Assembly: GCA_036785375.1 (NCBI GenBank)
Contig: JAWMAR010000040.1
Location: 6,324,001-6,388,000 of the forward strand
Direction: 5' to 3'
Length of the DNA: 64,000 nt
Origin: Leucoraja ocellata
Lineage: Eukaryota
The notes under the pieces were generated by a model, which ran no database searches, was not told the origin of the DNA, and was given only the letters and a program-made list of their open reading frames with translations. Positions within the stretch are counted from its first letter, which is position 1. Each line of letters begins with the position of its first letter. The translations under genes were made by a program, and so were the position numbers. Of the stretch, positions 715-58,412 are shown in pieces.

Positions 715-849
715 CATCGGGTTTCGCTAATTTTGGACGCAGATCAGATTGTAGTCCTGTTTGAGGGCACAGTAGCGGAGAACGATTCTGTATCTAATTT
801 GATGAGCAAAGACAGCAAATTTGCCTCTTTAGTGAAGTCCAAAAAATAA
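715..849 (+). CDS. Alternative terminal coding exon ('A-type', SUR2A-like) of a sulfonylurea receptor (ABCC8/ABCC9 family), C-terminus of NBD2
   Basis: Polypyrimidine acceptor ccccctttccttttatAG (713-714), phase 0. Translates HRVSLILDADQIVVLFEGTVAENDSVSNLMSKDSKFASLVKSKK*, resembling the SUR2A tail ([30 protein letters not shown]...). Not in the ORF track because it has no ATG. Confidence 0.8.
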   Translation, partial: HRVSLILDADQIVVLFEGTVAENDSVSNLMSKDSKFASLVKSKK

Positions 850-1050
850 AGATGCAGGCACAAAGGTGACTTGCTGGGTTTGTATGGGAATGGTGTGTAA
901 TTGTTGCAAAAACAGATGTATTCCGCTTCCAAAACTAACCCGGGCTGTGTTTTGCTTTCCAGCGATGAGTGGCTAACCAAGATTCATATTTTTCAAACTA
1001 ATATCTGGCCTTGAAAACAAATCATGCTAATAATTATTTTGGTTTTCCAG

Positions 1051-1188
1051 CATCGTGTGCACACCATTTTGAATGCAGACCTGGTGATTGTGATGAAGAG
1101 AGGAATTATCTTGGAATACGACACTCCCAGCATACTCTTGGAACAAAGAGATGGAACCTTTGCCTCTTTTGTACAGGCAGATAAATGA
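1051..1188 (+). CDS. ABCC8: Terminal coding exon of sulfonylurea receptor SUR1 (exon 39-equivalent, 'B-type')
   Basis: Acceptor ttttggttttccAG (1049-1050). Translates [45 protein letters not shown]. The ADK end matches SUR1, and it lies just upstream of KCNJ11 on the same strand as in other vertebrates. ABCC9 is not fully excluded. Confidence 0.8.
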
Positions 1189-1229
1189 TACATAGCAATA
1201 GATGCATTTGTAATTTCATTTGTTCTGTA

Positions 1230-1235
1230 AATAAA
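1230..1235 (+). promoter_or_regulatory. Candidate polyadenylation signal of the SUR gene
   Basis: AATAAA about 40 nt downstream of the stop at 1188. Confidence 0.35.
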
Positions 1236-2061
1236 ATTGGCACATTTCTTACCGATGCAGTGTAGTGGCCAAAGTTTTTCCCTGGTTCGGATGTAAACTA
1301 TTTACCATGTACCTGTCGAATCCCTTTTAAACGTGTTTATAGACCTAATTCTCAGTTTCTGTTTTCGAAGATAGCAATAATTTTGTGTTTTACTGTCCAT
1401 TATTGTTGTCAGCAATCTTCACCGTTCATTCTCCTGCTCCCAGAGCCAATAAGTTATATTAGTCCTACATGCCTTCCTATTTTCACGCCAGTCTGTTTCG
1501 CCCAGAAAGGTTAGTTCTGCCTTTAGGCATCCATATTTGCGAGTCTTTGTAAGTTTGCATCCCTCGATACAATGACAACAACCAGGTAGGATGGGAGAGA
1601 CGCTCTATATGCAGCACTCTTTCAGTGAATCGCAGGGGCCGCACAAGGGTAATGTTGTGTTCAGTGACCTAGAGAGCTTTGTTTATCTGGGCTACAAAAT
1701 AGGCTGACACATCCTTAAACTGCAATGTGAGTCAGTGTCTGTTGTTCAACATATCCTGCTATACTTCAAACCACAAGTACGGAAAACACCTGGGATTTTC
1801 ATCAAAGGGAAATGGTAAATAATTCAGGAGGCAAGACTGATGTCACTTCCAAAATAACATGTCAGGAATAGCACAAAGCAAGATTCTATATTATACATTT
1901 TCAAGAAACGATTGTTTGATTGCGCTATTTATGCTGATTGACAGAAATGTGTGATTAACCAGAAGATTAAAACAATTTCCTTTGGTGGCAGACATCAGGA
2001 CAAAGGAATATAATTAAAATTAGGGCCAAGTTGTTTTGGGTCAGAAAGATGACATAAAAGG

Positions 2062-2690: not shown

Positions 2691-2799
2691 TCCATCAGCT
2701 TCCCCTATCTGGTTACAGGCATGATTGGCAGCAACAGCTGGCGTGCCCTCCCCTTGCCTCCTCCTTCAACATACAACCTAGGCTTTGAAGCTCTGTAGT

Positions 2800-3983
2800 C
2801 TATGTCTCTATGTGTCGATCTCCCAGTATTTGAAGACTGGCTGCTTGCTCTCTTCTGCCAGTGTTTGCAGGTTGGTTCTCCTCTCTTTGTCTCTGTGATT
2901 GAAGTGGACTGTTCCCTCCCTCCCCCCCCTCCCCAGTGCTTGAAGGTTGATTACCTGTCTCTCTATCCCTGCGCCTTTCTCTCCCCCAGTGCTTGAAGGT
3001 TGAATACCTCTCTCTCTCCATCTCTCTCCCCATGTTTGAAAGTTGGTTGTTCCTGTTCCCCTCTCTCTCACTGTCATTTAAGTGGAATGCTCCTCTCTCT
3101 ACCAGTGTTAGAAGCAGGACTACTACTACTCCCTCCCACTCTTTGACGCTTGATTGCTCCTCTCTATCTCAGTTTTTCACTGTCTGTCATTGAAATGGAC
3201 TATTCCTATCTCTCTCAACCAGTGTTTGCATCGACTGCTCCTTTCTCCTTCTCTCATGCCCCCCCCCCCCCCCCAGGTTTAATGCCGGACCATTTTTCTC
3301 TGTCCCCGAGGCAGACTGCTCCTCTCTGCATGTGTCTTTATCCCACTAGACTGCTGTTCTGTCTCTCTCCCAGTTTGAAGGTTATCTCTCTGTCATTAAT
3401 GTGGACTGCTCTTCTTTCTCCCCGTTTTTGAAGATTGGTTGTTCTCCGCTCTTCTTTCCTCTATTTGAAGCCAGCCTGCTTCTCCCCCTGTCGTTGGTGG
3501 AATGCTCCTAATCTGCTTGAAAGCACACAATTCTCTGTCACTGAAGTAAACTGCTCCTCTCTGTCGTCCTCTATCTTTTAAACGCTGCTCCTCACTCCGT
3601 CACTGAAGTAGACTGCTCCTCTGTTCGAAACACTGCCCCTCTCTGACATTGAAGTTGTCTACTTCTCTCCGTCTCTCTCTCTATTTGAAACACTGGCCCA
3701 CTGTCACTGAAGTAGCCTGCTCCTCTCCCTGTTTGAAAGAACACTGCTCCTCTCTCTGTCACTGAAATAGACTGCCCCTCTCTGACTGTTTGAAAGAACA
3801 CTCCTGCACTGAAGTGGGCTGTACCTCTCTCCTAGTGTTTGAAACCAGACTGCTCCTCTCTGCCATTATTGCAGTGAGACTCTCCGTCTCACTCTCTCCC
3901 CTCCAGTTTTTGAAGCCAATCTGCTCCTCTCTCCCAGTTTGAAGGTTGGTTGTTTTTCTCTGCCCGTTTCTCTCCCTCTCCAG
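2800..3983 (+). repeat. Degenerate pyrimidine-rich minisatellite upstream of KCNJ11
   Basis: Recurring motifs (c)agtgtttgaa, ctgtcactgaagt(a/g)gactgctcctctct with strong CT strand bias. Confidence 0.7.
3955..3983 (+). promoter_or_regulatory. Candidate 3' splice acceptor of a 5'-UTR intron of KCNJ11
   Basis: ttttctctgcccgtttctctccctctcCAG ends exactly where the CpG-rich exon-like sequence begins, 62 nt before the ATG. Confidence 0.5.
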
Positions 3984-4045
3984 TGAGCTGAGCTGAACCG
4001 AGCCCGGCCGGCGGGTGAGGGCACTCGCCCTGCGATGGGCCCACC

Positions 4046-5288
4046 ATGCTGTCGGCCAGGAAAGAGCTGGTGGCCGAGGAGTACGTGCTGCGGCTGCAGG
4101 AGGAGGTGGTGGCACGTCCCGCTGCCGGGAGAGGCCACGTCGGGCTCGCTTCGTCGACAAGCACGGCGCCTGCAATGTGGCGCACACCAACATCCGAGAG
4201 CAAGGCCGCTTCCTGCAGGACGTCTTCACCACGCTGGTCGACCTGAAGTGGCGGCACACGCTGCTCATCTTCACCATGAGCTTCTTGTGCAGCTGGCTGC
4301 TGTTCGCCATGATCTGGTGGCTGTTGGCATTCGCTCACGGCGACCTGGACGACGGAGTAGGTGGAGGGGGCCATCTCCCCCGGCCGTGCCCTGCATCACC
4401 AGCCTCCACTCCTTCACCTCGGCTTTCCTCTTCTCGGTCGAGGTGCAGGTGACCATCGGCTTCGGCGGGCGGATGATCACCGAGGAGTGCCCGTTCGCCA
4501 TCGCCGTGCTGCTGGCGCAGAACATCGTTGGGCTGGTGGTGAACGCCATCATGATGGGCTGCATCTTCATGAAGACGTCGCAGGCGCGGCGGCGGGCCGA
4601 GACGCTCATCTTCAGTCGCTCGGCGGTGGTGGCGCCGCGGGACGGCCGCCTGTGCCTCATGTTCCGTGTGGGCGACCTGCGCACCTCCATGATCATCGGC
4701 GCCACCGTGCGCGCGCAGCTGGTGGGGCGGGCGCGCACGGCCGAGGGGGAGGTGCAGCCGCTGCGGCAGCTCGACGTCTCATTGGACGGGCCGGCAGGGA
4801 GCGGCAGTTCCATCTTCCTGGTCTCGCCCCTCATCGTGGCGCACGTCATCGACGGCTCGAGCCCGCTCTACCGGCTAACGGCCGCCGGCCTGACGCGCGC
4901 CCGCTTCGAGCTGGTCGTCGTGCTCGAGGGCGTGGTGGAGACCACCGGCATCACCACGCAGGCGCGCACCTCCTACCTCTCCACCGAGATCCTGTGGGGG
5001 CACCGCTTCGTCCCCGTCGTCTGCGAGGAGGACGGACGCTACTCGGTCGACTACTCCAAGTTCGGCAACACTGTCAAAGTGTCCACGCCGCCGCTCGGCG
5101 CCCGGCAGCTGGAGATGGAGCAGGCCGAGGCGAGGCACCGGCCCCAGGTCAGCCTGGGGGGCGACGAGATGGAAGAGGCGGAGGAGGAGGGGGTGGAGAT
5201 AGAGGGGGAGGGAAAGGTGGTCAACTTCGATATCTCGCCCGGCGTTAGGAGGAGAAAGAGCTCGGTGTTTCAGAGCGACTGTTTGTGA
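4046..5288 (+). CDS. KCNJ11: ATP-sensitive inward rectifier K+ channel Kir6.2, intronless CDS with two apparent 1-bp deletions (about 4118-4120 and 4366-4370)
   Basis: Kozak ccacc[18 protein letters not shown] (frame of 4046), then [37 protein letters not shown]...AFAHGDL (frame of 4015), then [29 protein letters not shown]...[14 protein letters not shown] (frame of 4035). GFG filter is diagnostic of Kir6. QDVF, HGDL, EEDGRY and the intronless CDS favour Kir6.2 over Kir6.1. Confidence 0.92.
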
Positions 5289-24072: not shown

Positions 24073-24272
24073 NNNNNNNNNNNNNNNNNNNNNNNNNNNN
24101 NNNNNNNNNNNNNNNNNNNNNNNNNNNNNNNNNNNNNNNNNNNNNNNNNNNNNNNNNNNNNNNNNNNNNNNNNNNNNNNNNNNNNNNNNNNNNNNNNNNN
24201 NNNNNNNNNNNNNNNNNNNNNNNNNNNNNNNNNNNNNNNNNNNNNNNNNNNNNNNNNNNNNNNNNNNNNNNN
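24073..24272. other. Assembly gap (200 N, probably a fixed-size placeholder)
   Basis: Run of exactly 200 N that cuts an Ig exon. Confidence 0.98.
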
Positions 24273-37433: not shown

Positions 37434-37581
37434 ATGTCCTTGTCCTTTTGTGGCAACGACAACGACACAGCCGCCTACAACGTGGACAGCGGAGTTCTCA
37501 ACAACGGGTGCTTCGTAGATGCCTTAAACGTTGTCCCACACGTCTTTCTGCTCTTCATCACCTTCCCCATTCTGTTCATCG
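37434..37581 (+). CDS. ABCC8: SUR1 exon 1 (148 bp coding)
   Basis: [50 protein letters not shown]; AAY/NNGC/LNVV are SUR1-type; donor G/GTAAG. Confidence 0.95.
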
Positions 37582-37649
37582 GTAAGCAAAGACCTCAAGG
37601 TGCTCTGTGTTCTTCTATAGGAGACAGAGTTACTTGTGCACACTTCTGA

Positions 37650-37814
<165 letters not shown>

Positions 37815-40689
37815 TAAGCCAGTCCATGTGTTGAGTCACATCGTCCCGGGGGCTATTTTTACTGCGGTTGCCGAGCTAGCTTTGTATGGAGTGGGCCGCT
37901 TCGCCTCTCTCAACTGTTCACTCTGGCCACAGAGAGGGAGAGGGAGAGGAGGAGGGGGAGGGGGGCAGGGGGGTAGAGAGAGGGTCAAGGTGTGGAGGAG
38001 GTAGTTAGGAGTTGAGGGGATATAATCTCCGATCCCAGAACAAAATTCAAGTACAAGAACCCGCTACTAGTTTAATGCATGATGTTAAAAAAAAACGTTC
38101 CTCTGTATCAACCTTAAAATAGACTCGGTCACAAACACTGACGTCTTGCTTTTGAATTATATATTGAATAGCAAATAAAAGTTCAGAATACTAATAGGAC
38201 AAGCCGGCTTTGAATCCTTTCAAATGGCCAATAATGTTTTTTTTTAGATACCCTGGAAGATGAAAGTTTTGTAATGATGGGGAGCCTACGTTTCAAGCAA
38301 ATGTGTCGTTTGTTCAAGTTTTTGTTTAACTTTGTTTCCGACGTTTAAACTGGTCCTAAAGGTGGGAACACCTGGGGTCCATGGCAAATTGGTCACGTCC
38401 TCCAGAGATGCTACCTGACCGGCTGTCACTCCAGCACTTCATGTTCAAACTACTATACCAGCCTTGTGTCAGCAAATTGATCAATTGGATTTTTAAAAAA
38501 AAGACAGCGTGCTGGAGTAACTCAGTAGGTTGGGCAACATCTCTGGTGAAGATGGATGAGCGATATTTCCGATACTGGCTTGAAGGAAGGGGAATGTGAT
38601 GGTGGAGGATTGTGTTAGTGAATGGACACCATGTCCAAAGTACCGTGATGGACAATAGAACCCTTGCTGTTTGTAATATTACATTAATTGGATGGAAATG
38701 TCAACAATATAATTAATAAATGCACAGGAGATATCTAAATTGGTGGCATGTAGGCACAAGGAACTGCAGATGTTGGTTTACAAAAATAAAGCACAAAGTG
38801 CTGGAGTAACTCAGCAGGTCAGACAGCATCTCTAGAGGTCAGATAGTTTAGTTTATTTAGTTTAGTTTATTATTGGCACGTGTACTGAGGTACAATGAAA
38901 AACGTTTTTGTTGCGTGCTGCCCAGTCAGTGGAAAGACTATGTACGATTACAATCAAGCTGCCCACAGTATTGATACAGGTTAAAGGGAATGATATTTAG
39001 TGCAAGCTAAATTCTAGTAAAGTCTGATTAAAGATAGTCTGATTGTCTCCTATGAATTAGATGGGAGATCAGGATCGCTCTGTAGTTGGTGAGAGGATGG
39101 TTCAGTTGCTTGATAACAGCTGGCGGGAAAAAACTGTTCCTGAATCTTGAGGTATAAGAAACTGATAGATGATGTTCTGGGTCAGGAAAGTCACCTATTC
39201 ATGTTCTCCAGAGATGCTGCCTGACATGCTGAGTTACTCCAGTGTTTTGTGTATTTTTATGTGTTAATTATTGCCAAGCAATCCAGTACTTTGTGTTTTA
39301 CTCAAGGCTGATTGTAAATGGGTTCAATAGCAGGAGTCACAAAGAGATCCTTGTATTCCCCAGAGATGCTGCCTGATCCGCTGAGTTACTCCAGCACTTT
39401 GTGATGGTGTTGATAGTGATGAGAGTCGTCTTGGGCTTTTGAATGTTATTGATCAATTGGTAGGAAGGACAGTAATACACGATGAAATTTAATGCAAATA
39501 AGTCTGAGGTGAAGCATCTTTGGACAACTCATAAGCTTCGGACATGCACATTGAATGGGAATTTCGAACACCATGCTGTCTTGTAAAAGCCGCTAACATC
39601 ACCAAAGACGTCCCACCCCGGTCATTCCTTCTTGTTCCTTCTCCTATCTGGCAGAAGGTACAGAAGCTTGAAAGCACGCACCACCTGACTCAGGAACAGC
39701 TTCTTCTCCTCTGTTGTCAACCTTCTGAATGGTCCTTCCATCAGCTAGGGTACTGTCCAATTCACCTCTTCCCCATTGTGGAGATTGGACTTTATCTATG
39801 GAACTGATGCGCTACAATCTGAAGATACACTGTATCTTCCCCTTTGTTCTTTCTATTGTATGTGAGTTTAACTTGATTGTATTTTTGTATAGTATTATAA
39901 TATTTGTTTGGATACTTTTCACTGTATCTCAGCACACATGGCAATAATAACCTAAACCTAAACAATGGTCTACATCTAAAAATGCCTGAAGGTGGCAGTG
40001 CAGGTAGATAAGGTGGGGACAAATGTGTAAAGGAAAGAACACAAAGTGCTGGAGTAACTCAGCAGATCAGGCTGCATCTCTGGAGAACATGGATATGTGT
40101 TGTTTCGGGTCAGGACCCTTCTTCTGAGATGCTTCTTGACCTGGTGAGTTACTCCAACACTATGTGATCTTTTGTGTATTGACCAACAGCTGCAGTTAGA
40201 GTCATTAGTCATACAGCGTGTAAACAGGCCCTTTGTCCCAACTTGCCCACACCGAACAACATGTCGCATCAAACAAGCAGTTCTTTGTTTCTACGATGTG
40301 TAAGGGAAACTTACATTGGAACCTAGAACGTAAGGGTTGTGAGATTATGGTACAACTTTATATAACGTGGGTTAGATGACAGCTGGAACATTGTATACAG
40401 TTCTGTAATTGCTGCACTTGGCTTGACTGTATTTATGTATGGTAATATCTGATCGGTTTGGATAACTTGGGAAACAAAGGTTTACACTGTACCTCGGTAC
40501 ACATGACAAATATAAGCCCAAACCTCAACCTCAATCTAAATCTTGGTAGTATTGGGTAAGTCCTTTAGAGAACGTGGTGGGGGTGGGGGGGGGGGGGGGG
40601 GGGGGGGGGCGTGGAGAGAAGTGGAGAGAGGGGGAGAAAAGGGGAAAGAAGGGGGGGAGAAGAGGGGGCGAAGGAGTGGAGAGACTTCT

Positions 40690-41097
40690 AAGAAATAAGA
40701 CAATGTTTAATAAAGTTTAACGGGCATTTAACCTACCGGTCTGTTTTTCTTGGTCCTGAAAACTCCAATGAGCCAATTAAAATGCCCGGTCATGCGGAGA
40801 TTGCCTACGGCTGCCCTCAACTGCCTGTAACGAAATAGTGACCCCACTCCACTGTACCGCAAGTGATAAAGAACCATGCCGACTAATTTTTACTCACGGA
40901 AATTTTTTTAACATGCTGAAAAAATTTCCGCAACCTCGCTGAGGCCACGAGTATTCGGGAACTTCACTCGAACATGAAGGAGAGTTCCAGTGATCTCATA
41001 GGACCTCCTGGGATCATGTGTCGACCATGCTGCGAGTTTGAGTCGAGGGCAAACTCTTCTAAACTTGCAGATTAGGTTGCCGCCGTGGGCAGCCCCT
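40690..41097 (-). mobile_element. Harbinger-like MITE, partial, related to 17887-18421
   Basis: Reverse complement aggggctgcccacggcggcaacctaat...gagtttgccctcgactcaaactcgcagcatggtcgac aligns by eye with 17887-18080; flanked by TAA. Confidence 0.65.
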
Positions 41098-41099
41098 TA

Positions 41100-42485
41100 A
41101 AGTAGGGATATGGTATGCTTGCCATCAGTGGCTGGGGCATTGAGTATAAGAGGCAGGAAGTCATGATGCAGCTTTATAGCAGAGTTGCACATAAGGTCAT
41201 CGAGTCAAAGGGCATGACGCAAGGAGCAGCTCAATCCACCTGGAGGACATGGCAGCTTCCGGCATACTCTGTTAACACACAAAACGCGTATTTTCTTACC
41301 TATTAAAAACTGCCGAAATGGTCCATTTTTGTGCTGTAAATAATTGTGGAGGGCGACTGCGGGCTCTGAACTGTGCTCTAGTATCTTTGCTCTGAACCCA
41401 AGCACCAAGGTGCAAGTAGCCGAAGGAGCACATCCCTCGGGACAGCCCCCACTCTCCCCCCGGGGTCAGCGCTGTCCGGCCACGGCTGCCCTCCCCCTGT
41501 GGGCCGCACTGTCACGGGCCGTGGGTCGGCAGCGCCCATACACGGGGCCGGGTGGAGCGGGGCCGCGGCTCCGGGCAGCGGACGCACAGGGACGAAAACC
41601 CGGCAACGTCCCCGTCATCTGCAGCAGAGTTGGGGACAGAATGGTCCCTCCGCCCACCCAGAGTCACTAACCGTCCTGCACCGGCACCCGACCCGACCTC
41701 CTCCCACCCCACCAACCCCCGGTTGCGGGGATAGACGGCCCGGGGTCCACGAGTGTAGAACCAGTCAGCGTGGAGTCCGGATGCGGGGACAGAAGACAGG
41801 CCCGCTACACTGGAAGCCATGGTAAGTGCTTACCTGCAGTTCACCGCGTGTACTCCAGTTGGCATTGCGTGGCAACAGCACGGGTCACGGGTTGTGACCT
41901 CGACTGCCGTGCAACTTCCATATAGGACTTTGGTTAGGCCGCATTAGAAATATTACGTGCAGATCTGGTCTCCCACGTTCCAGGGTGGATACGGAGGCTT
42001 TGGAAAGAGTGTAGAGGAAGTTTACCAGAATGCTGCCTGGATTCGAGGGTATTAGCTACAGGCAGAGGTTGGACAAACTTGGATTGTTTTGTCTGGAATG
42101 CTGGAGATTGAGGGGAAATCTGATATATAAAATTATGAGAGACATAGACAGGGTCAACAGCCAGATCCTTTTTTCCCAGGACGGAAATATCAAATACTAA
42201 AGGGCATTGCTTTAAGGTTCCAGGGGCAAAGTTTAAAGAAGAAATCCATGTGGGAAGGTTTTTTGCATAGAGTGTGATGAGTGCCTGGAATGCACTGCTG
42301 GGGATGGTGGTTGAGGAAGACACAATTGTGGTATTTAAGAGACTTTTAGATATGCACTGATATGTAGAGAATGAAAGGATACGGATCATGTGCAGGCAGA
42401 TAAGAGTTAGTCTTGGCATCAATGTTCGGCACAGACATCGTGGACCGAAGGGCCAGTTCCTGTGCAGTAGTGTAATATGTTCTGT
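41100..42485 (+). mobile_element. CR1 LINE 3' fragment split by the 41179-41920 insertion
   Basis: LAISGWGIEYKRQEVMMQLY|RTLVRP...RKFTRMLPG...LDKLGLFCLE. Confidence 0.8.
41179..41920. mobile_element. Unclassified GC-rich DNA-transposon-like insertion with TATA target duplication
   Basis: Interrupts CR1 sequence gcagctt-TATA-ggactttggttagg; TATA at 41175-41178 and 41921-41924; inverted core AGTTGCAC/GTGCAACT at the ends. Confidence 0.65.
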
Positions 42486-43189
42486 TGTTGAACCCTGGAA
42501 TTCACTGTTTAATTTACCATTACACCTTTGAATACTATCAATCCTACTGTCTACCCATATAAAATCGTTAGAAGTGCAATAAAATCAAGTTTTTAGTGGT
42601 TGCTTTTACAAAAAGTGCAAATGATCATTCTAAAAGCCAATTAATATAAGCAATAATCAATTTCTATTACAATTAAATGTTACTTTGGGCTCACTGGAAC
42701 ATTAAACATATGATTATTTTTAGTTGTTATTTGTAATATCAGTTGGTTAAGGTCAATTAACACATGTATAAAATGGTTTTTCTTAAGCCTGACATCCTGA
42801 ACAGGGTTTTGCAAAGCTATTTAAAATTCTGTTTTAATACAGAGAAACATTTTACTGAAAATGTAACAAGGGACTGAATGAATACAATGGAAAGAGCATC
42901 AATATTAAAATGTGTTGATATTAATAAGACTGAAGAGAGGTGTCCCCATAATTGAAAACATTTGGAATAAGAAGTCTGAGATAGAATTGTCTAAACTCAT
43001 AGTAAGTTGAGGCACAGTGGTGCAGCAGTTAGTTCCGCTGCCTCATGGCTCCAGGGACCTGGGTTCAATCGTGACCTAGGCTGTTACCTATGTCTGTGGC
43101 ACTTTCTCCACATAGACTCGAGGGACAGAGCGATGGGGGGAGATTCGGGCCAGCTCGGACTTTATTCCTTGGAATGCAGGAGACTGAGG

Positions 43190-43860
43190 TCGAAAACTTC
43201 AAATTCCTTGGAGTCAATATCACCAACAACACCTCCTGGACCACTCATATTGAAGCAATGACCAAGAAGGCACACCAATGCCTCGACTTCCTTGGAAGGC
43301 TTAGGAAGCTTGGCATGTCCCCTACAACTCTCACCAACTTCTACAAATGCACCATAGAAAGCATTTAATCAGGATGTATCATTGCTTGGTTTGGGAACAG
43401 CTCCATCCAGGACCGTAAGAAAATGGAGCGAATTGTGGATGCAGCCCAGGCCCTCACACAAACCAACCTCCCTTCTATTGATTTCATTTATAGCGCGCGC
43501 TGCCTCGACAAGGCCAGCAGCATAATCAAGGACAAGTCACACCCTGGCCACTCCCTCTCCCATCAGGCAAAAGGCATAGAAGTGTGAAAACGCACACCAC
43601 CAGATTCAGGGACAGTTTCTTCCCAGCTGTTATCCGGCAACTGAATTATCCTACCACAACCAGAGAGCAGTTCTGAACCACTATCTATCTCTGATGTCCC
43701 TCAGACTATCCTTGACTGGACTTTACTGGCTTTACCTTGCACTAAATGTTATTTCCTTATCATGTAAGTGGATTGATTGTAATCGTGTATTGTCTTTCTG
43801 CTGACTGGTTAGCACGCAACAAAAAGCTTTTCGCTGTACACGTGAAAATAAATTATACTG
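43190..43860 (+). mobile_element. Rex1/Babar-type LINE 3' fragment
   Basis: VENFKFLGVNITNNTSWTTHI...KKAHQCLDFLGRLRKLGMSPTTLTNFYKCTIESI*SGCIIAWFGNSS. Confidence 0.75.
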
Positions 43861-46800
43861 AACTGAGGGGTGATATTATACAGGTGTATAAAAACATGAG
43901 GGGAATAAATAGGGTGAATGCAGATCCTCTTCAGACTGGGACACTTCCTGAGTCGGAAGAAGAATCCCAACTCGTAACATCACCTATCCATGGTCTCCTG
44001 CGATGCTGCCTGATGCGCTGAGTTACTCCAGCATTTTATGTCTTTTTTAGAGCACAATGTGATTTGTCTGGTCTGATTAATAGACGACGACGAGACAGAA
44101 TTAATAACAATGTTTTGTTGTGATGCGACCTGGCCTCAGCCAAACGCGAATGGAGATATTAATGATTAAGGGGATACAGCAGTTCTGAACGCCAACAGTA
44201 ATGGGTGACTTCAAATAACTTCAATAAAACCTGGGTATGATGGCAATAAGCTATGCAGTGCATCTGACCCAAGATTGCTTTTTGACAATGGGGTCAGATC
44301 TATGATTTACTGCAACTGCTACAGAAGTTTAAATAATGGGTGTCTATAAAAAGAATTCAGTCATGAATATGTTTGTATAATTGATTATCTGTGTAATTGT
44401 CCATTTAATAGATGTAAAACTCCATCGCTGCAAATTAAGTTTGTAGTGAAATTTCCCTTAGACATATATGCCTCTATCATGAAACTCTCAATTGAGAAAG
44501 CAGATGAAGCAACAAAAATAATTTTGATATCAATATGGCAGAGGCAGTTGATGAGCATATCATAAGATCATAAAATGTAGGAGCAGAATTAGGTCACTCG
44601 GCCAATCGAATCAACTCCGCCATTCGATTACAGCTGATCTGTTTTTCTCTCACAATCCCATTCTCCTGCCTTCTCCCCGTAACCCTTGACATCCTTATTA
44701 ATCAAGAACCTAACAATCTCCGCTTTCAAAATACCCAATGACTTGGCCTTCACCTCTGTCAGCTGCAATGAATTGCACAGATTCACCGCCCTCTGACTAA
44801 AGAAATTCCTACTCATCTCCATTCTCTCTTAGGCAGGGGGAGGAAATCAGACATTTCTGAATCACAAAATGTTGGGATTAAAATAACCTACAAACCCGCA
44901 GTTTTTTGGAATTAGTTTAGTTTAGAGATACAGCATGGTAACAGGTCCTACAGAGCCACCGAGTCTGCATCGACCAGCGATCCCCGCATATTAACACCAT
45001 CCTACACACATTAGGGACAATTTACATTTATATCAAGTATATTTACCTTCCCGGAGAGGTGATCAAGTTTCGGATCACATTCTCTGGGCTCTGCGGCCTA
45101 CCATAGATGGAGTTGAAAAGCCTCCTCGGACAGTCGTGAGCCCCACTGCGGGGAGCGGACATACCATCGGAGCAGATTCCTTGCCTGCAGACTTGCCATC
45201 AAGGGCTCACAGTCTCGGGAGAGGCTAATCAGGAGCTCCAATGCCGCAGAAGGTTCGTCCAGCCCCGACACGAGGTTCAATCGCTCCCGATGCGCGAGCT
45301 GAACGCCTCGACGCGGATGGCCTGAATGCTGCCGGCTATGGGACTCAAGACCATCCCGTCGAGGCCCCTGACCAAGGAAGAACAAAAAGGGAAGGACTTG
45401 AACTTTATTTTCGCCTTCCATCACAGTGAGGGATGTGTAGGAGTCACTGTGATGGATGTTTATGTTAAATGTGTTTTTTGAGTCTGTTGCTTTTTTAAAT
45501 TGTATGACTGACCTGGCCAGTGAAATTTCACTACACCAATTGGTGTATGTGACAATAAATGAACCTTATTATCCTTACCCTTATGAACCTAAATCTGAAC
45601 GTCTTTGGAGTGTGGGAGGAAACCGAAGATCTCGGAGAAAACCCATGCAGGTCATGGGGAAAACGTACAAACTCCATACCGACAGCACCCGCAGTCGGCA
45701 TTGAACCCGGGTCTCCGGTGCTGCAAGTGCTGTAAGCCAGCAACTCTACCGCTGTGCCACCCTAATGGGAATCCATAATGGGATGTGGGAGGAAACCGGA
45801 GCACCAGGAGGAAACCCACGTGGTCACAGGGAGAGCACCCAAGGTCAGGATCGAACCAGGGTCCCTGGCACTGTAAGGCAGCAGCTCTACCTGCTGCGCC
45901 ACTGCGCCACCATGAGACTGGGACGCTTTTGATTATTTTGCCTGGAGATGCATGTCAGGTGGAAGTTCAGTTCAATCTGCCTCCCATAATTAGGACTTTA
46001 TCATTACAGGAAATCCATGAACCACTGATGTAGAACTAAACTATAGGTGCTTAAATTACACTGCTTTTCCATTATTAATTTGTTTTTTAAATTTAAGAAT
46101 ACAATATGGAAACAGGCCCTTCGGCCACCGAGTCCATGCCGACCATCGATCACCCATTCACATTAATTCTATGTTATCCCACATCTCCATCCACTCCTTC
46201 TAGGGGAAATTTACAGAGGGCCGAATAACCTGCCCACCTGCATGTCTTTGGGATGTAGCAGGAAACCGAAGCATCTGGGGAAAACCCATGTAATCACAGG
46301 GAGAATGTGCAAAACTCCACACAGATAGCACCCGAGGTCAGGACTGAACCCGGTATCTGGCGCTGTGAGGCAGGAGCTCTACCAGCTGCGCCACTGTTCT
46401 GTCTTAGATGACATAGAATAACAAAAAGTATTTTCAGATTTCAACTGTGGTTTGATTGCTTGCAGTAAATATTCATCCAAGAACAAAATTCCTTCCAAAT
46501 ATAGGATAACAATTTCTGGCTCATTTGGCACAATCCTTGTCAACCTGTAATTTCTGCTGTTTTTCCTGCATAAGTATTTCCTTGGAAGAAATACCCAGTA
46601 CTGCGCGTGAGAAAGGTTTAAGTCTAGGTTTATCATTTTAACATGTACTGATAGCACTCAAAGACAGGATTGAACCTGCGTACCTGAAGCAGCTACTGCA
46701 TCAATAAATTCTTTCTCATCTACAATATATCACAACACATGATGTTTTCATCATTTGTAGGAACGTAGTTACGTGTAGCAAGGTACAGTGGAAAGCTTTG

Positions 46801-47045
46801 TTTTGCATTCTATCCAAACAGATCACATATACCATACATGGATACAATCAGACTCGTGTAAAATAGGTAGAGCAAAGGGGTAGATACAGAGTGCAGAACA
46901 TAGTTCTCAGCATTGCGATGCATCGTATTGAAATATAATTGATAAAATCCTTTAGCATTTAAATATTCTGAGTCATTTGTCAGAATTGCATTTAAATTTT
47001 TGCCTAGTTTTCTTCATGATAAATATTTTCATTTGTGTTCCCTAG

Positions 47046-47167
47046 ATTTACGGAGACTCGTCATTTGCATCTGTACATGCCTGCTGGAATGGGCTTCATG
47101 GCCGCGATTACATCTATCATTTATTACCATAACATTGAAACGTCAAACTTCCCCAAACTTTTGTTAG
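47046..47167 (+). CDS. ABCC8: SUR1 exon 3 (122 bp)
   Basis: [40 protein letters not shown]; cctAG / GTGAG. Confidence 0.95.
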
Positions 47168-48016
47168 GTGAGTTTTTCTTTATGAGGGCTAGACTACACA
47201 GCTGTATTCTGTGCCCTGTGCCATTCTTTGCTTCAAAATGTTTCTGCTTTTCATGGTGTCTTGCATAACTATGCCCCGTGGCAAAGTGTTCTATGGTCCA
47301 ATAACAAAGAAAAAAGACAATTTTCAGAATAAAAATAATAAATCTCATTCTATTTATAGTGACATATAAAAAAAAGTAATGGCTTTTTGTCTGATTTCTA
47401 CATCAGAAACGCAGAACACAGCACAGGAACAAGCCCCTTAGCCCACAATGTCTTTGCCGAACATGATCTATTTCCCTCCATTCCCTGCATACCCATGCAA
47501 CCTATCTAGAAGCCTCTTAAACATGACATTTATATCACCCTCCACCACCACCCCGGCAGCTTGTTCCAAGCACCCACCACCCTCTGTGTATTAAAAAATA
47601 TGGCCTGCACATCTCCTTTAAACATTGGCCCTCTCACCTTAAAGCCACAGTATGCCCTGTAGTATTTGACCTTCTATCCTGGGGGAAAAGGTTCTGACTG
47701 TCCACCCTATCTATGCCTCTAATCATTTTATATACCTCCATCAGGCCTCCCCATAACCTCCAACATCCCAGAGAAAACAATCTAAGGCTACTTCTTTTAA
47801 TTACTCTTTCTAAACAAACATTTTCAAAACTCTAGTTAGTCCCTTTTGATCTAATTTCCAATATATCCTAATTTTTTTCTCATAACTATATATTATCATT
47901 ACAGTTATCATCAATAAAATGACATCCATCGAAAGGCAGGAGTTGATGATATGCAAGTAGATGTGTAAAAATGTCGATTTTCCCCTTTCAATGTAAAGGA
48001 GTCAATGTGTATGTAT

Positions 48017-48022
<6 letters not shown>

Positions 48023-48077
<55 letters not shown>
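48023..48077. repeat. (AT)n microsatellite
   Basis: About 27 perfect AT units. Confidence 0.95.
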
Positions 48078-48079
<2 letters not shown>

Positions 48080-49364
48080 TCAACTCAATATATAGGACAA
48101 CTCAAATTTCTCTGTCAATGTTTAGTAGAGAGAGTTCCATCTATCAGATAATTGAGATGAGGTTGTGGAAATGAAATCAACACATGACTCCCTGGAGGAT
48201 ACTTGAAGTAATTAAATATCTATAATAATTGTTGAATAGTGCACACATTCAAATGACAATGACACCGAGCTACTGTACACATTAAAGGAAATAGCCAACT
48301 GATTGTTTATTGTTTAAAGAACATAATCGTTCACAATTCGCAACTCGTTTTGTCTTTGGGGTGTGGGAGGAAACCGAAGATCTCGGAGAAAACCCAAGCA
48401 AGTCAGCCTTGCAGACAAGCAGCCGTAGTTGGGATCGAACCCGAGTCTCTGGCGCTGTCAGGCAGTAGCACTACCACTACGCCACCATGCCACCCACATT
48501 ATTAGGGATAATTGACATTCTTTACCAAAGCCAATTAACCTACAAACCTGTATGCCTTTGGAGTGTGGGAGGAAACCTGTCTCCTCACACCTTCTGTATT
48601 TTAATCTCTGGCCTTTGTCCAACCATTGTCCTATCAACACCCCCCTCCTAAATCAACCTGTTACATGCCCGGCTTTGGCCTGACTCTCCTCTCTTCCAGC
48701 TTTCTTTCCCCATCCCCCTATGAATCAGTCTAAAGAAGTGTCTACAACCCAAACGTCACCTATTAATGTTCTCCTGAGATTCTGCCTGACCCACCGAGCT
48801 ATTCCAGCACTTGTTTTTTTTTTGTAAACCCGACATCATCAGTTCCGTCAGTTCCAGAGGGAGGTGGATGCTTAGAACATGCTGCCTGGGTTGGTGGTGG
48901 AGGCAGATATGGTAGTGGCATTTAACAGGCTTTTAGATGGGCACATTGATATGTAGGGAATGGAAGGATGTGGATCATGTGCAGGCAGAGAAGATTTGTT
49001 TAACTTGGAATCATGTCCGACACGGACATTGTGGGCCGAAGGGCCTATTCATGTGCTGTACAGTTCTATGTAAAAAGGAAGCCAATGTTTGATATCCTGC
49101 ATTAATATGGAATTAGGTAGTGAAGTTGCCAAAATGTAAGAAACAGCATCTTCCGCACCTTTCTCCCAAATCTGCGTTGGTAACAAATGCACGTTCGTAC
49201 CCATGACGCTTATAAGACCAAAACTGTTCTTTAACTTCCTCACTGAACTGCCCACAAAGTAAATCAATGTAGTCACTGAGCGACACTTTGCAAATCCTTC
49301 CTCAGTATATCTGTAAGCAGCATTATTGCTCGTGATCCCATCAGATAAATCCAGGTGAAAAAAG

Positions 49365-49545
49365 ACACGAAGTGCTGGAGTAACTCAGTAGGGCAGCGAA
49401 CATCTCTGGAGAACAGGAATAGGTGACTCTAAAGGTTCCTGACCCGAAACATCACATATCCATGTTCCCTAGAGATGCTGCCTGACCCATTGAGTTACTC
49501 CAACACTCTGCGCCTTTTATTGTAAACCAGCATCTGCAATTTCTT
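49365..49545. repeat. Inverted pair of Penelope terminal-repeat copies
   Basis: aagtgctggagtaactcag...catctctggagaac followed by its reverse complement tgacccgaaacatcac...gagatgctgcctgacc...tgagttactccaacac. Confidence 0.7.
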
Positions 49546-50565
49546 GAGACCTGATGAATTAAAGTCTCAGCTGCTCGATTGTCTCTTCCTACCCAGACGG
49601 ATAGTTAGACACCATCCAAGAGAGAGTTTGATTTAACTCTTAGGGCTAAGGGAATCATGGGATATGGGGAAGAAGCCGGAACAGGGTACTGATTTTGGAT
49701 GATCAGTCATGATCATATTGAATGGAAGTGCTGACTCAAAGGGCCGAATGGCCTACTCCTGCACCTATTTTCTATGTTTCTATCCCTCCCCTCCAAAACC
49801 AACTCACTTCCTGCCTGGTAGCCTTCACCTATCCCAGTTTGGAGCCTCTGTGATGACTAACTTCATTGCCCATTCTGTCAATTGAAACTTGCCCCTCTTA
49901 AACACCACTATCGTATCTGCCCCCAGCACCACCCCTGGCAGCACGTTCCAGGCACCCACCACTCTCTGTGTAAGAGAGTGGTGCGTGCATATCTCCTTTA
50001 AACTTTTCCCCTTTTACCTTAAGGCTAAACGTTCTAGTATTTGATTTTCCCGTTCTGGGGAAAAGGTTCTAACTGTCTCCCCTACTACCCATGCCTGTGG
50101 TAACAAAGGGAGATATGGATTCCTATTCTTTTTCTTCAGAGATGCTGCCTGAGTTACTCCAGAATTTTGTGTCTATGGTGTAAATCAGCCTCTGCAGCTC
50201 CTTCCTACACATTTTTCCGGTGGAGGTGGTTGAGGCAGGTACTATCACAATGTTTAAAAAACATTTGGACAGGTACATGGATAGGACAGGTTTAGAGGGA
50301 TATGGGCCAAGCGCGCGGGCAGGTGGGACTAGTGTAGATGGGGCATGTTGGTCGGCATGGGCAAGTTGGGCCGAAGGGCCGGTTTCCATGCTGTATGTCT
50401 CTGTGACTCTGTAACATAGAGGTAAGAAAGCAATGTTAGGGCTACTGATCAGCCTCTGCATCCTCTGGTAATAAATCTCACTGTCTGTATTGTGTCAGTT
50501 GCTGCAACTGTGGAAGTACAACTTTGTTGTAGATGGTAACAGGATTGCGGTCATTTGCTTTGCAG

Positions 50566-50732
50566 CTTTGCTGGTCTATTGGACATTAGCCTTTCTCACG
50601 AAGACGATCAAATTTGCCAAGTTTTGTGAACATGGGATTGGTCTGAGCCAACTCCGTTTCTGCATCGCTGCCCTGTTGGCAATATTGTACGGCATGCTAC
50701 TGGCTGTGGAGGTTAACGTCATCAGAATGCGG
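50566..50732 (+). CDS. ABCC8: SUR1 exon 4 (167 bp)
   Basis: [19 protein letters not shown]...QLRFC...[15 protein letters not shown]; gcAG / GTAAG. Confidence 0.95.
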
Positions 50733-52372
50733 GTAAGGCAGGGGCCATTCTTTCCTTTGTCCACCTTTCCCAATGGGAATGAGGCTGCTGAAGAGGAATG
50801 CTGCCTGGATTAGAGAGTATTAGCTACAGGAAGAGTTTAGTTTGGAGATACAGCCTAGAAATAGGCCCTTCGGCCCTTCGAGTCTGTGCCGACCTGCGAT
50901 CCCAGCACACTAACACTGTCCTACACACTAGGGACAATTCACAATTCTACCAAGTCAATTAACCTACAAACCTGTACGTCTTTGGAGTGTTTGAGGAAAC
51001 TGGAGATCCCAATGAAAAGCCAAGCAGGTCATGGGGAGAACGTACAAACTCCATACAGACAAGACCCGTAGTCAGGATTGAACCCGGGTTTCTGACATAT
51101 TAAAATCTAAACATCACTGTGCCGCCCTGTATACTATTCTATGTTCAATGTTCTAAGGAGGATCCTGACCCAAAATGTCACCTATCCACATTCTCCAGGG
51201 ATGCTGCCTGACCTGCTGAGTTACTCCAGCATTTTGTATCTTTTTTTGTAAACCATAATCGACAATTCTTTGTGCCTCCATTGTACTGACTGCTGTACAG
51301 TCACTACTACATCAGAAGAGTTATAGGGATACAATCATGATTGCGATGTAAGTCATCGAGAAATATTTATGTCATTATCTTACCTGTTATACAGTCAGCA
51401 TGTACTTGGACATAACTCTTTGTCAAATTATTTATTGCTGCAGAGATAAATAAACTCTTCAAACTGACACTGGGCATCAGCAGCTCGCTTCATCTGGTGA
51501 AAGTGCTAACATGTGCTAACAGGATAACTCTTGTGGCACGCAATGTGAATATTATATCCAGTGCGCCCTACTTGAAGTGAGACTAGTCATGCCTATTGTT
51601 TATCAAGACAGAAAATAGACATAGTCATACAGCATGGAAACAGGCCCTTTGGCCCGACCTGCCCACACCAGCCAACATGCCCCATCTACACAATTGTTTA
51701 TCAAGACAAAATAAATAGTTTGCAAGGTTTGCTCAGGACATTGAGACAGGGAATTGGAACTGTCATGATCTCGTTCAATGGCAAGCTGGCTCAAAGGACC
51801 TTGTGATCTATCATTACGTCGATCCTGTGTCCTCTGGTCCTAGACTCTCCCACTCATGGAAACATCCTCCCCACTCTATCCAGGCTTAGTTTAGCTTAGA
51901 GATACAGAGAGGAAACAGGCCCTTCGGGCCACCTAGTACGCGCGAACCAGTGATCCTTGCAAATCAACACTATTCTACACGCACTAGGGAAAATGTTACA
52001 TTTACACCAAGCCAATTAACCTAGAGACCCGTACGTCTTTAGAGTGAGGGAGGAAATCAAAGATCCCAGAGAAAACCAACGCGGTCACGGGGATAGCGTA
52101 CAAACTCCGTACAGACAGCACCCGTAGTTGGGATCGAACCCGGGTCTCTGGTGCAGAAAGCGCTGTAAGGCAGCAACTCTACCATTGCACCACCATGATG
52201 CCCTATTCGCTATTTGCTATTCTTTCACTATTCGGTAGCTTTCATTGATTTGACGCTGTTTTACAGAAAATGAATGAGTGATTCTGAATATTTATTTAAG
52301 AATATATATTATAAACATTCAACCTCATCGTTGCTTCATTCACTGACTCGTGCAAGATTTCTCCTGTCCTAG

Positions 52373-52615
52373 CGATACATTTTCTACAAACATTCAAGAG
52401 AGGTGAAGCCTCCAGAAGACCTGCAAGATTTGGGAGTCAGATTCTTGCAGCCATTCGTGAACCTCCTATCCAAATGTACCTATTGGTGGATGAACAGATT
52501 CATAACAACAGCACATAGGAGACCTATTGACCTCAAAGCCATTGGCAAGCTGCCCTTTGCCATGAGAGCAATAACCAACTATGTACTCCTGAAGGATGCA
52601 TACGAAGCACAAAAG
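52373..52615 (+). CDS. ABCC8: SUR1 exon 5 (243 bp, L0 loop)
   Basis: [41 protein letters not shown]...DAYEAQK; cctAG / GTAGT. Confidence 0.95.
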
Positions 52616-54649: not shown

Positions 54650-54838
54650 AAGAAAGCTCTGGTCGGGCTGCATGACACGAAGATGATCTGGCGGGTGTTA
54701 CGGCAGGCCTTTGGTCGCCCCATCATTCTCAGCAGCATCTTTCGCATCTTGGCCGACCTGCTGGGCTTTGCCGGACCTCTCTGCATCTCTGGGATTGTGC
54801 ACCACCTCAGCGACGAACATCAAGCCTTCCATCCACAG
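54650..54838 (+). CDS. ABCC8: SUR1 exon 6 (189 bp)
   Basis: KKALVGLHDTKMIWRVLRQAFGRPIILSSIFRILADLLGFAGPLCISGIVHHL...HPQ; gcAG / GTACG. Confidence 0.93.
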
Positions 54839-57172: not shown

Positions 57173-57337
57173 GTCCAAATGCTGGGAGTTTATTTCATTT
57201 CCTCACAGGAGTTTCTATCCAATGCCTATGTGATCGCAGTTCTATTATTCCTCGCTCTCCTTTTACAAAGGACATTTCTTCAGGCGTCTTACTACGTTGC
57301 CATAGAAACTGGAATCAACCTACGAGGAGCAATTGAG
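57173..57337 (+). CDS. ABCC8: SUR1 exon 7 (165 bp)
   Basis: [55 protein letters not shown]; acAG / GTACT. Confidence 0.95.
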
Positions 57338-58076: not shown

Positions 58077-58232
58077 ACCAAGATCTACAATAAGATCCTT
58101 CGATTGTCCACATCCAACATGTCCATGGGGGAGCTGACCGTGGGGCAGATATGTAACCTGGTCGCCATCGACACCAACCAGCTGATGTGGTTCTTCTTTC
58201 TCTCCCCCAACCTCTGGGCCATGCCCGTGCAG
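58077..58232 (+). CDS. ABCC8: SUR1 exon 8 (156 bp); gene continues beyond the window
   Basis: [52 protein letters not shown]; cccAG / GTAAC. Confidence 0.95.
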
Positions 58233-58412
58233 GTAACTTGACGGGGCGTTGATGCGAAACCTCTTAAGCAAAGTCACCGTGACTTTAGTGGTGACTTTCA
58301 CACCGATGACCTGACAAGTCAAGAGAGTCAAGAATCAAATGTGTTTTATTGTCATTCGTCCCGAAACGGAACCATTAAATTCGTACTTGGAGAATATCTA
58401 AATAAATAGAAT

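What the first reader, a model, noticed from the sequence alone, without database searches (positions are those of the whole stretch)
715..1188. KCNJ11-linked SUR gene has SUR2A/SUR2B-style alternative C-terminal exons
Seen: two phase-0 acceptor exons about 200 bp apart, both starting at the NBD2 H-loop (HRVS... 44 aa; HRVH... 45 aa), both open to their own stop, in A-then-B order. A possible donor (AAG/GTGAC at 866) follows the first stop. Established: this A/B switch defines ABCC9 (SUR2A vs SUR2B, differing in Mg-nucleotide and diazoxide response), whereas mammalian ABCC8 has only the B-like exon. Inference: since the gene ends in ADK and abuts intronless Kir6.2, this looks like an ABCC8 encoding a 'SUR1A' isoform. 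That would mean the exon duplication predates the ABCC8/ABCC9 split and was kept in this lineage. The alternative is an unusual ABCC9-KCNJ11 pairing. Either would give a K-ATP subunit combination I do not know to be described.
Basis: partly seen in the sequence, partly recalled or inferred. Interest (0 to 1): 0.88.

Follow-up and report, generated by a model that had tools for sequence, protein, structure and literature searches.

The report
SUR1 gene with SUR2A-style exon switch

Summary
Confirmed. Window 715-865 and 1051-1188 are two paralogous last coding exons, A (44 aa) and B (45 aa). Both start at the NBD2 H-loop codon and both have canonical splice sites. An assembled RNA contig from a sister skate joins the upstream exon to A and A to B. 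A is therefore a cassette exon with its own stop, as in SUR2A.

The gene is ABCC8 (SUR1), not ABCC9. Both tails match RefSeq ABCC8 isoforms of related skates (A 44/44, B 45/45). The A-type Leucoraja protein scores about 2700 bits on solved SUR1 structures against about 2406 on SUR2. The gene 2.9 kb downstream groups with KCNJ11 (support 95/93). Its two frameshifts are assembly indels.

A-type ABCC8 isoforms are annotated in 15 of 21 cartilaginous-fish species examined, including elephant shark, and in 0 of 229 bony-vertebrate ABCC8 entries. A 45-column tree groups ABCC8-A with ABCC9-A (94-97% bootstrap). The AU test does not reject independent origin (p 0.10-0.11).

The isoforms sit in public annotation, but seven full-text searches found no paper on them. 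Function is untested.

The scan noted the same feature before (s1-884700) on a second ABCC8 copy 65,620 letters beyond this window. Whether that copy is real or an assembly duplicate is unresolved.

The parts
715..865 (+). ABCC8 alternative last coding exon A (cassette, 151 nt): coding 715-846 (44 aa), stop TAA 847-849, then 16 nt to the GT donor at 866
   Evidence: Translation. Splice sites. RNA contig X13 record 9 lies on 715-863 and continues at 1049. 44/44 identical to the tails of Amblyraja ABCC8 X2/X6 and Leucoraja ABCC8 X2.
866..1050 (+). Intron between exon A and exon B (GT...AG, 185 nt)
   Evidence: Borders read. Skipped by the RNA contig (the joint is ambiguous by the two letters AG).
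1051..1188 (+). ABCC8 last coding exon B: coding 1051-1185 (45 aa), stop TGA 1186-1188. It serves as 3'UTR when exon A is included.
   Evidence: Translation. PDB matches SUR2B 64 bits and SUR1 55-57 bits. 45/45 to Amblyraja and Rhinoraja ABCC8, 44/45 to Leucoraja.
1189..1260 (+). 3'UTR of ABCC8 with AATAAA at 1230-1235. The end is approximate (inferred).
   Evidence: Signal found. Single-cell RNA reads (X22) give depth 22.2 in 1001-1200, 13.6 in 1201-1400 and 0 in 1401-1600 on the + side.
2783..2870 (+). Non-coding 5' exon of KCNJ11. The intron runs to about 3983 (GT...AG if the joint is shifted by the 3 shared letters).
   Evidence: X13 record 11 lies on 2783-2867 and then on 3981-4842. Borders read.
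4047..5288 (+). KCNJ11 (Kir6.2) coding region without an intron. In the assembly two single letters are missing, after 4117 and after 4365.
   Evidence: ORFs in three frames. 99% identity to Leucoraja 'KCNJ11-like' P0001. Both the best DNA holder X1 and the RNA run X13 carry one extra letter at each of the two places. Clade membership.
24073..24272 (.). The only run of N in the window (200 letters). It lies between the first ABCC8-KCNJ11 unit and the second ABCC8 start.
37434..58235 (+). 5' exons (aa 1 to about 445) of a second assembled copy of ABCC8. Context only, not part of the exon switch itself.
   Evidence: tblastn of shark and skate ABCC8 proteins against the window. Earlier notes s1-885291 and s1-884700.

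Best explanation
The stretch holds the two alternative last coding exons of skate ABCC8 (SUR1), which lies head-to-tail 2.9 kb upstream of KCNJ11 (Kir6.2). Exon A (715-865) is a cassette exon. When it is included, the protein ends in a 44-residue A-type tail, the stop lies 16 nt before the last junction, and exon B becomes 3'UTR. When it is skipped, the penultimate exon joins 1051 and the protein ends in the usual 45-residue B-type tail. Both tails replace NBD2 from the H-loop to the C-terminus. By analogy with SUR2A and SUR2B, the switch should change NBD2 dynamics and the MgADP threshold of the channel; this step is inferred, not tested. The A/B pair is most likely inherited from the single SUR gene that existed before ABCC8 and ABCC9 split. 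Cartilaginous fishes kept it in ABCC8, and bony vertebrates lost it or at least never have it annotated.
For: Exons, frames, stops and splice sites. An RNA contig joins upstream exon, A and B, leaves the introns uncovered, and has a loose end before 715 that reads ...FADRTVVTIA. Tails are identical to RefSeq ABCC8 isoforms of skates. Leucoraja ABCC8 X2 (A-type) scores about 2700 bits on SUR1 against about 2406 on SUR2A/B. It is 82% identical to coelacanth ABCC8 and 81% to gar ABCC8, against 70-73% to ABCC9 pieces. The neighbour falls in the KCNJ11 clade at 95/92.7, with AU p 0.043 against KCNJ8 and 0.06 against the Kir6.3 clade. ABCC8 and the KCNJ11-clade gene sit on a record of the same length in 9 species. 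Of 87 cartilaginous-fish ABCC8 entries, 30 are A-type, in 15 of 21 species; the ten distinct tails have 88% mean column identity. Of 229 bony-vertebrate entries, 0 are A-type. A8+A9 clade: 97/82 and 94/87. B8+B9 clade: 97/96. The role of C42 in the MgADP response comes from passages of PMC10276813 and PMC10950283.
Against: The RNA proof is one assembled contig from one small run (35 million letters). That run is from a sister species, and the tool only guesses that it is RNA. Two raw RNA runs gave no read on exon A: depth 0 in 601-1000 for X24 and X22. X22 covered only exon B and the UTR, as 3'-end libraries do. All other exons of this gene copy lie outside the window. The ABCC8 assignment therefore rests on tail identity with predicted RefSeq models of relatives, on synteny and on the RNA contig. 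I built no ABCC8/ABCC9 tree that includes cartilaginous-fish ABCC9. A profile of A tails scores solved SUR1 (33.6-36.4 bits), ABCC3 (36.8) and SUR2A (35.6) alike, so there is no specific affinity for mammalian SUR2A. The AU test does not reject an independent origin (p 0.104 and 0.11). There are no functional data. The assembly holds two ABCC8 copies.
Confidence: 0.8

Rival explanations
1. Exon A arose within ABCC8 of cartilaginous fishes after the ABCC8/ABCC9 split. It would come from a fresh duplication of exon B, or from a copy of the ABCC9 A exon, and would resemble ABCC9-A by convergence or retained ancestral residues.
For: AU tests do not reject trees that hold ABCC8-A and ABCC8-B together (p 0.104, 0.11). 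Only 45 columns and two ABCC9-A tails were available. The A-tail profile scores generic ABCC tails as high as ABCC9-A (outgroups reach 48.8 bits, Naja ABCC9-A 48.6). It also scores ABCC3 at 36.8 and SUR2A at 35.6. No A exon appears in any of 229 bony-vertebrate ABCC8 entries.
Against: The best trees put A8 with A9 (97/82, 94/87) and B8 with B9 (97/96), 13.5-13.7 log-likelihood units better. Mean identity is 57% for A8-A9, 44% for A8-B8 and 77% for B8-B9. Both genes share the same layout: A before B, A a cassette with its own stop. A copy made from the already derived B exon would have had to revert to ABCC-like residues at several places.
Confidence: 0.22
2. Exon A is spliced in only as noise or as a non-productive 'poison' exon, and no A-type SUR1 protein matters in the animal.
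For: No protein or functional data exist. Raw RNA runs gave no reads on exon A. In elephant shark all 5 A-type entries start PRV instead of HRV, which removes the H-loop histidine.
Against: The reading frame and 19 of 44 residues are invariant across ten distinct tails from rays, sharks and a chimaera, with 88% mean column identity. This is not expected of unselected sequence. The stop lies 16 nt before the last junction, inside the range that escapes nonsense-mediated decay (established 50-55 nt rule). In one RNA run the A-included form was the only one assembled.
Confidence: 0.06
3. The gene is ABCC9 (SUR2) that has come to lie beside KCNJ11.
For: Taken alone, exon B scores slightly higher on solved SUR2B (64 bits) than on SUR1 (55-57 bits).
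Against: Turtle, shark and skate ABCC8 carry the same kind of B tail ending in FVQADK. The full proteins that carry these exact tails score about 290 bits higher on SUR1 than on SUR2 and are named ABCC8 in every source. The higher SUR2B score reflects divergence of mammalian SUR1 tails.
Confidence: 0.01

Closest known systems
ABCC9 terminal exons 38A/38B giving SUR2A and SUR2B (mammals)
   Same: Two tandem paralogous last coding exons in A-then-B order. Each encodes NBD2 from the H-loop to the C-terminus. The products are alternative. B tails are nearly the same in both genes (77% mean identity). The A tail groups with ABCC9-A in the best trees. The exon 38A/B description comes from passages of PMC8021106.
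   Different: The switch sits in the paralogue ABCC8, beside KCNJ11 instead of KCNJ8. The A tail has 44 residues against 45 for B, whereas SUR2A and SUR2B have equal length (passage of PMC10276813). It is only 51-64% identical to the one ABCC9-A tail compared (cobra). Tissue pattern and function are unknown.
ABCC8 / SUR1 of bony vertebrates
   Same: Orthologous gene, 75-82% identical over the full length. Same position upstream of KCNJ11. Same B-type tail.
   Different: No A-type tail in 229 entries examined. A 2024 review describes A/B variants for ABCC9 only (passages of PMC10950283).
Other reported SUR1 splice forms (short SUR1, exon-skipped forms; the names 'SUR1A2' and 'SUR1BDelta31' appear in a reference list)
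   Same: They are alternative products of ABCC8.
   Different: As far as titles and abstracts show, these are truncations, internal exon skips or sequence variants in mammals, not a swap of the last coding exon. The label 'SUR1A' is already used in another sense. I saw the title of Gros et al. 2002 only in the reference list of PMC8021106 and did not read the paper.

Membership tests
ABCC8 (SUR1) orthologue | Full-length protein closer to SUR1 than to SUR2 | tested here: met
   Leucoraja ABCC8 X2 (P0458) has a tail equal to window exon A. It scores 2689-2701 bits on SUR1 chains against 2406-2407 on SUR2A/B. It is 78-82% identical to turtle, gar and coelacanth ABCC8 and 70-73% to ABCC9 pieces. 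The test used a relative's protein, because the window holds only the last two exons of this copy.
ABCC8 (SUR1) orthologue | Lies directly upstream of KCNJ11 on the same strand | tested here: met
   The exon B stop is at 1188 and the KCNJ11 start codon at 4047, both on the + strand with no N between. KCNJ11 clade membership.
ABCC8 (SUR1) orthologue | Groups with ABCC8 and apart from ABCC9 in a tree that includes cartilaginous-fish ABCC9 | not tested
   No cartilaginous-fish ABCC9 protein could be fetched.
SUR2A/SUR2B-type terminal exon switch | Two tandem paralogous exons, each starting in phase 0 at the H-loop codon and open to its own stop | tested here: met
SUR2A/SUR2B-type terminal exon switch | Both forms are made as mRNA: A included (followed by B as UTR), and A skipped | tested here: met
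   A included: X13 contig. A skipped: shown only indirectly, by B-type RefSeq and UniProt isoforms of the same species. No read across a penultimate-exon-to-1051 junction was displayed to me.
SUR2A/SUR2B-type terminal exon switch | Tissue-specific choice of A or B | not tested
The tissues of the runs are coded.
SUR2A/SUR2B-type terminal exon switch | The two tails give different Mg-nucleotide or opener responses | not testable with these tools
   Needs electrophysiology. Known only for SUR2A/B (passages of PMC10276813 and PMC10950283).
Orthology of ABCC8 exon A with ABCC9 exon 38A | A tails of both genes form one clade apart from all B tails | tested here: inconclusive
   The clade is found at 97/82 (47 rows) and 94/87 (48 rows). 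AU p is 0.104 and 0.11 for the rival. Only 45 columns and two ABCC9-A tails were available.
KCNJ11 (Kir6.2) | Groups with bony-vertebrate KCNJ11 rather than KCNJ8 or the Kir6.3 clade | tested here: met
   Careful tree of 49 Kir6 proteins. The cartilaginous group (14 rows, including the 99%-identical Leucoraja protein) joins bony-vertebrate KCNJ11 (19 rows) at 95/92.7. AU p is 0.043 when held with KCNJ8 and 0.06 when held with Kir6.3.
KCNJ11 (Kir6.2) | Uninterrupted coding exon | tested here: met
   The two frame breaks of the assembly are contradicted by X1 and X13, each of which has one extra letter after 4117 and after 4365. The only intron is in the 5'UTR.

The most novel reading that the evidence does not exclude
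The A/B terminal-exon switch is an ancestral property of the vertebrate SUR gene, older than the duplication that gave ABCC8 and ABCC9. The A tail keeps more of the general ABCC pattern, so B would be the derived invention. Cartilaginous fishes still make a 'SUR1-A'/Kir6.2 channel with a SUR2A-like high MgADP threshold, a subunit combination that exists in no bony vertebrate. Bony vertebrates divided the labour by dropping A from ABCC8.
Probability: 0.5. Interest if true: 0.65.

Novelty: new member of a known kind. Interest (0 to 1): 0.55.

Why it matters
The 42-residue C-terminal swap between SUR2A and SUR2B sets how readily heart and vessel K-ATP channels open under metabolic stress. It has been treated as a feature of ABCC9 alone. 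Finding the same switch in ABCC8 of sharks, rays and chimaeras dates it, most likely, to before the two SUR genes separated. It also turns 'why does SUR1 look like SUR2B?' into a loss event in bony vertebrates. In addition it offers natural SUR1 proteins with an A-type tail, so the effect of the tail can be tested on a SUR1 body that lacks the conserved R-helix sequence invoked for SUR2A (passage of PMC10950283). In practice the isoforms are already in RefSeq, so constructs can be made at once.

Tried and rejected
**ABCC9 reading.** Considered because exon B alone scores higher on SUR2B. Dropped.

**'Third SUR paralogue paired with Kir6.3' reading.** Considered because cartilaginous fishes have three Kir6 clades and a second SUR start lies in the window. 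Dropped for two reasons. The second start is ABCC8 itself. Kir6.3-clade genes sit on records of other lengths than KCNJ11 in 4 of 4 species where both lengths were listed (Stegostoma, Carcharodon, Narcine, Mustelus).

**Kir6.2 pseudogene reading.** The two frameshifts suggested it. Dropped.

**Exon A against solved structures.** Neither the single sequence nor a ten-sequence profile showed a specific affinity for mammalian SUR2A.

The HMM scores are not to be used. My script cut two rows wrongly (one A tail too short, one whole protein as a 'tail'). One search repeats the test on correct rows.

**USH1C search.** I looked for USH1C exons between the N run and the second ABCC8 start, using the harmonin-like head of a sturgeon fusion model. 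It found nothing but ABCC8 exons.

**Short hits.** These held no further A-type tails.

**Not possible here.** I opened no supplements. Gene tables in supplements of shark and skate genome papers could mention these isoforms without my searches seeing it.

**Joined models.** I built or searched no joined model of the window's exons. Window exons were searched one by one, and full-length comparisons used proteins from the databases.

Full report
**What is there.** On the + strand, 715-849 translates to HRVSLILDADQIVVLFEGTVAENDSVSNLMSKDSKFASLVKSKK*. 1051-1188 translates to [45 protein letters not shown]. Each is preceded by a pyrimidine tract and AG. The first is followed by AAAG|GTGACT, with GT at 866. 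AATAAA lies at 1230. Exon A is therefore 715-865 (151 nt, stop 16 nt before its donor). The intron is 185 nt, and exon B starts at 1051. Exon B matches the C-termini of solved SUR2B (64 bits, E 2e-17) and SUR1 (55-57 bits). Exon A matches ABC-C tails only weakly.

**RNA.** I laid four runs on window 1-6000.
- One 2,865-letter contig of run X13 lies on 715-863 and then on 1049-1178, and carries 2,586 more letters upstream. The joint equals 865|1051, because the two letters AG fit on either side.
- The loose end before 715 reads ...FADRTVVTIA, the end of the penultimate NBD2 exon.
- The tool only guesses that X13 is RNA. However, X13 leaves 1-600 and 1201-2000 uncovered. A second contig skips 2868-3980 in front of the Kir6 gene. 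X13 therefore behaves as spliced RNA.
- All X13 depth on the two exons comes from this A-included contig.
- The raw single-cell run X22 covers only exon B and the UTR (depth 22.2 and 13.6; 0 on 601-1000), as 3'-end libraries do. It cannot tell A from B.
- The oligo-dT run X24 gave almost nothing here.

Inclusion of A, followed by B as UTR, is thus shown by one contig from a sister species, not by many reads.

**Which gene.**
- The window holds only these two exons of this gene copy. I reached full-length proteins through a search of exon B against cluster representatives. That gave turtle ABCC8 (P0125, named). Two homologue searches followed, plus cluster listings.
- RefSeq ABCC8 of Amblyraja radiata (X2, X6) and Leucoraja erinacea (X2) end in a tail identical to exon A (44/44). 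Amblyraja and Rhinoraja B isoforms equal exon B (45/45), and Leucoraja differs at one residue.
- Leucoraja ABCC8 X2, the A-type protein, scores 2689-2701 bits on solved SUR1 chains and 2406-2407 on SUR2A/SUR2B.
- It is 82%, 81% and 78% identical to coelacanth, gar and turtle ABCC8, and 70-73% to the ABCC9 pieces I had.
- Taken alone, exon B scores higher on SUR2B. This is because mammalian SUR1 tails have diverged: turtle, gar, coelacanth and shark ABCC8 share the FVQADK ending.
- I could not fetch a cartilaginous-fish ABCC9, so a full ABCC8/ABCC9 tree was not made.

**The neighbour.**
- A Kir6 gene starts at 4047 and ends at 5288. Its largest open piece is 99% identical to Leucoraja 'KCNJ11-like'.
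- In a careful tree of 49 Kir6 proteins, the cartilaginous-fish group that holds it joins bony-vertebrate KCNJ11 with support 95/92.7. Holding it with KCNJ8 gives AU p 0.043, and with the Kir6.3 clade p 0.06.
- The reading frame is broken twice in the assembly. Both the best DNA holder (X1) and X13 carry one extra letter after 4117 and after 4365. The breaks are therefore assembly indels, and the gene is intact.
- ABCC8 and the KCNJ11-clade gene lie on a record of the same length in nine species: Scyliorhinus canicula, Mustelus, Stegostoma, Heptranchias, Hypanus, Cetorhinus, Narcine, Callorhinchus and Leucoraja.

**How widespread.**
- Of 87 cartilaginous-fish ABCC8 entries examined, 30 end A-type, 54 B-type and 3 are cut short.
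- A-type entries occur in 15 of 21 species with readable tails. These include rays, skates, several shark orders and the chimaera Callorhinchus.
- Six species showed only B: Scyliorhinus canicula, Hypanus, Hemitrygon, Rhinoraja, Rhincodon and Heterodontus.
- The ten distinct A tails have 88% mean column identity and 19 invariant columns of 44.
- Among bony vertebrates I saw 147 cluster representatives (145 B, 2 other). I also saw 73 further isoforms of gar, bichirs, lungfish, sturgeons, frogs, a caecilian, turtles, eels and arowana (63 B, 10 cut short), and 9 further coelacanth isoforms (8 B, 1 cut short). That makes 0 A-type of 229.
- Cluster listings are samples (for one turtle cluster, 15 of 100 members). 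A missing annotation does not prove that the exon is absent.

**Age of the pair.** I compared 45-residue tails: 10 ABCC8-A, 20 ABCC8-B, 3 ABCC9-B, one ABCC9-A (the first 40 residues of a cobra model, P0121) and 13 other ABC-C proteins as outgroup.
- The best solved match of the cobra ABCC9-A tail is SUR2A.
- The best tree has ABCC8-A with ABCC9-A (97/82) and all B tails together (97/96). Holding ABCC8-A with ABCC8-B costs 13.7 log-likelihood units, AU p 0.104.
- Adding the rat SUR2A stretch printed gives 94/87 and p 0.11.
- Mean identities are 57% for A8-A9, 44% for A8-B8, 48% for A9-B9 and 77% for B8-B9.
- The A-tail profile scores the cobra ABCC9-A at 48.6 bits and B tails at 26.5-46.8. One outgroup reaches 48.8. 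On solved structures, SUR1, SUR2A and ABCC3 score alike.
- My reading is that A tails keep more of the general ABC-C pattern and B is the derived form. That is hard to reconcile with a late copy of B. An origin before the gene split is favoured, at about 0.6-0.7, but not shown.

**How it most likely works.**
- Shown: the exon layout, the A-included mRNA, and conservation of the A reading frame.
- Inferred: skipping of A gives the B form. I saw this only as annotated isoforms, not as a junction read.
- Inferred from established knowledge: the A stop, 16 nt before the last junction, escapes nonsense-mediated decay.
- Inferred by analogy: the tail swap retunes NBD2. [quoted passage not shown] SUR2A-containing channels need more MgADP to open. 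C42 plays a primary role in that response (passages of PMC10950283, section 'Regulation of MgADP/MgATP response'). The SUR2B C42 makes NBD2 more dynamic (abstract of PMC10276813).

**In print?** Seven full-text searches found no paper on an alternative last exon of ABCC8, or on K-ATP subunits of cartilaginous fishes. The only paper holding both ABCC8 and elasmobranch terms is a review of fish intestinal ABC proteins, and it says nothing on this (passages). The 2024 K-ATP review has no occurrence of 'evolution' or 'duplicat'. The isoforms themselves are public as RefSeq and UniProt entries. Supplements were closed.

**Caveats on the assembly.**
- The window also holds exons for about residues 1-445 of ABCC8 at 37,434-58,235 on the same strand, after the only N run (24,073-24,272).
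That is about 128.9 kb downstream of this one.
- The assembly therefore carries two ABCC8 units. Related annotated skates list one ABCC8 gene each, and the N run sits where a unit boundary would fall. I therefore suspect an assembly duplicate, but I could not test it.
- The residue differences suggest the window comes from a skate very close to, but not the same as, Leucoraja erinacea.

**Tools.** I made no joined model of the window's exons.

Noticed in passing
window 4117 and 4365: The Kir6.2 reading frame is broken twice in the assembly, each time by one missing letter in a short run of the same base. The best DNA holder and an RNA run both carry the extra letter. Other GC-rich genes of this assembly may hold the same kind of error.
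   Followed up: yes
window 24073-24272 and 37434-58235; also about 65.6 kb beyond the window end: A second copy of ABCC8 starts 36 kb after the first one ends. The only N run lies between the units. Related skates are annotated with one ABCC8 gene. Real tandem duplication or assembly duplicate: not resolved.
   Followed up: partly
window 2783-2870 and 3984 onward: KCNJ11 has a spliced non-coding 5' exon, with an intron of about 1.1 kb, in front of its intronless coding exon (RNA contig).
   Followed up: partly
window 2000-2800: A very highly repeated element lies between ABCC8 and KCNJ11. Summed contig depth reaches about 560,000 against about 31-37 beside it. It is also abundant in both raw RNA runs, with many opposite-strand joints.
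   Followed up: no
window 19232-24072, minus strand: Immunoglobulin-domain ORFs lie convergent to KCNJ11, at the place where NCR3LG1 lies in human (order recalled). Also noted earlier by the scan (s1-885401).
   Followed up: no
proteins P0420, P0508, P0509, P0510, P0516 (Callorhinchus milii): All 5 elephant-shark A-type ABCC8 entries begin the tail with PRV instead of HRV, so the H-loop histidine of NBD2 is replaced in that isoform only. The B-type entries keep HRV.
   Followed up: no
Kir6 proteins: A third Kir6 clade (support 99/97) holds seven cartilaginous fishes, a gar, two pipefish 'kcnj11-like' proteins and a caecilian. Kir6.3 is thus not peculiar to zebrafish, as a passage of PMC5367309 puts it. 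In four species it lies on a record of a different length from KCNJ11.
   Followed up: partly
window 4001-6000: The KCNJ11 gene is an island of 61% G+C in a region of 35-48%.
   Followed up: no
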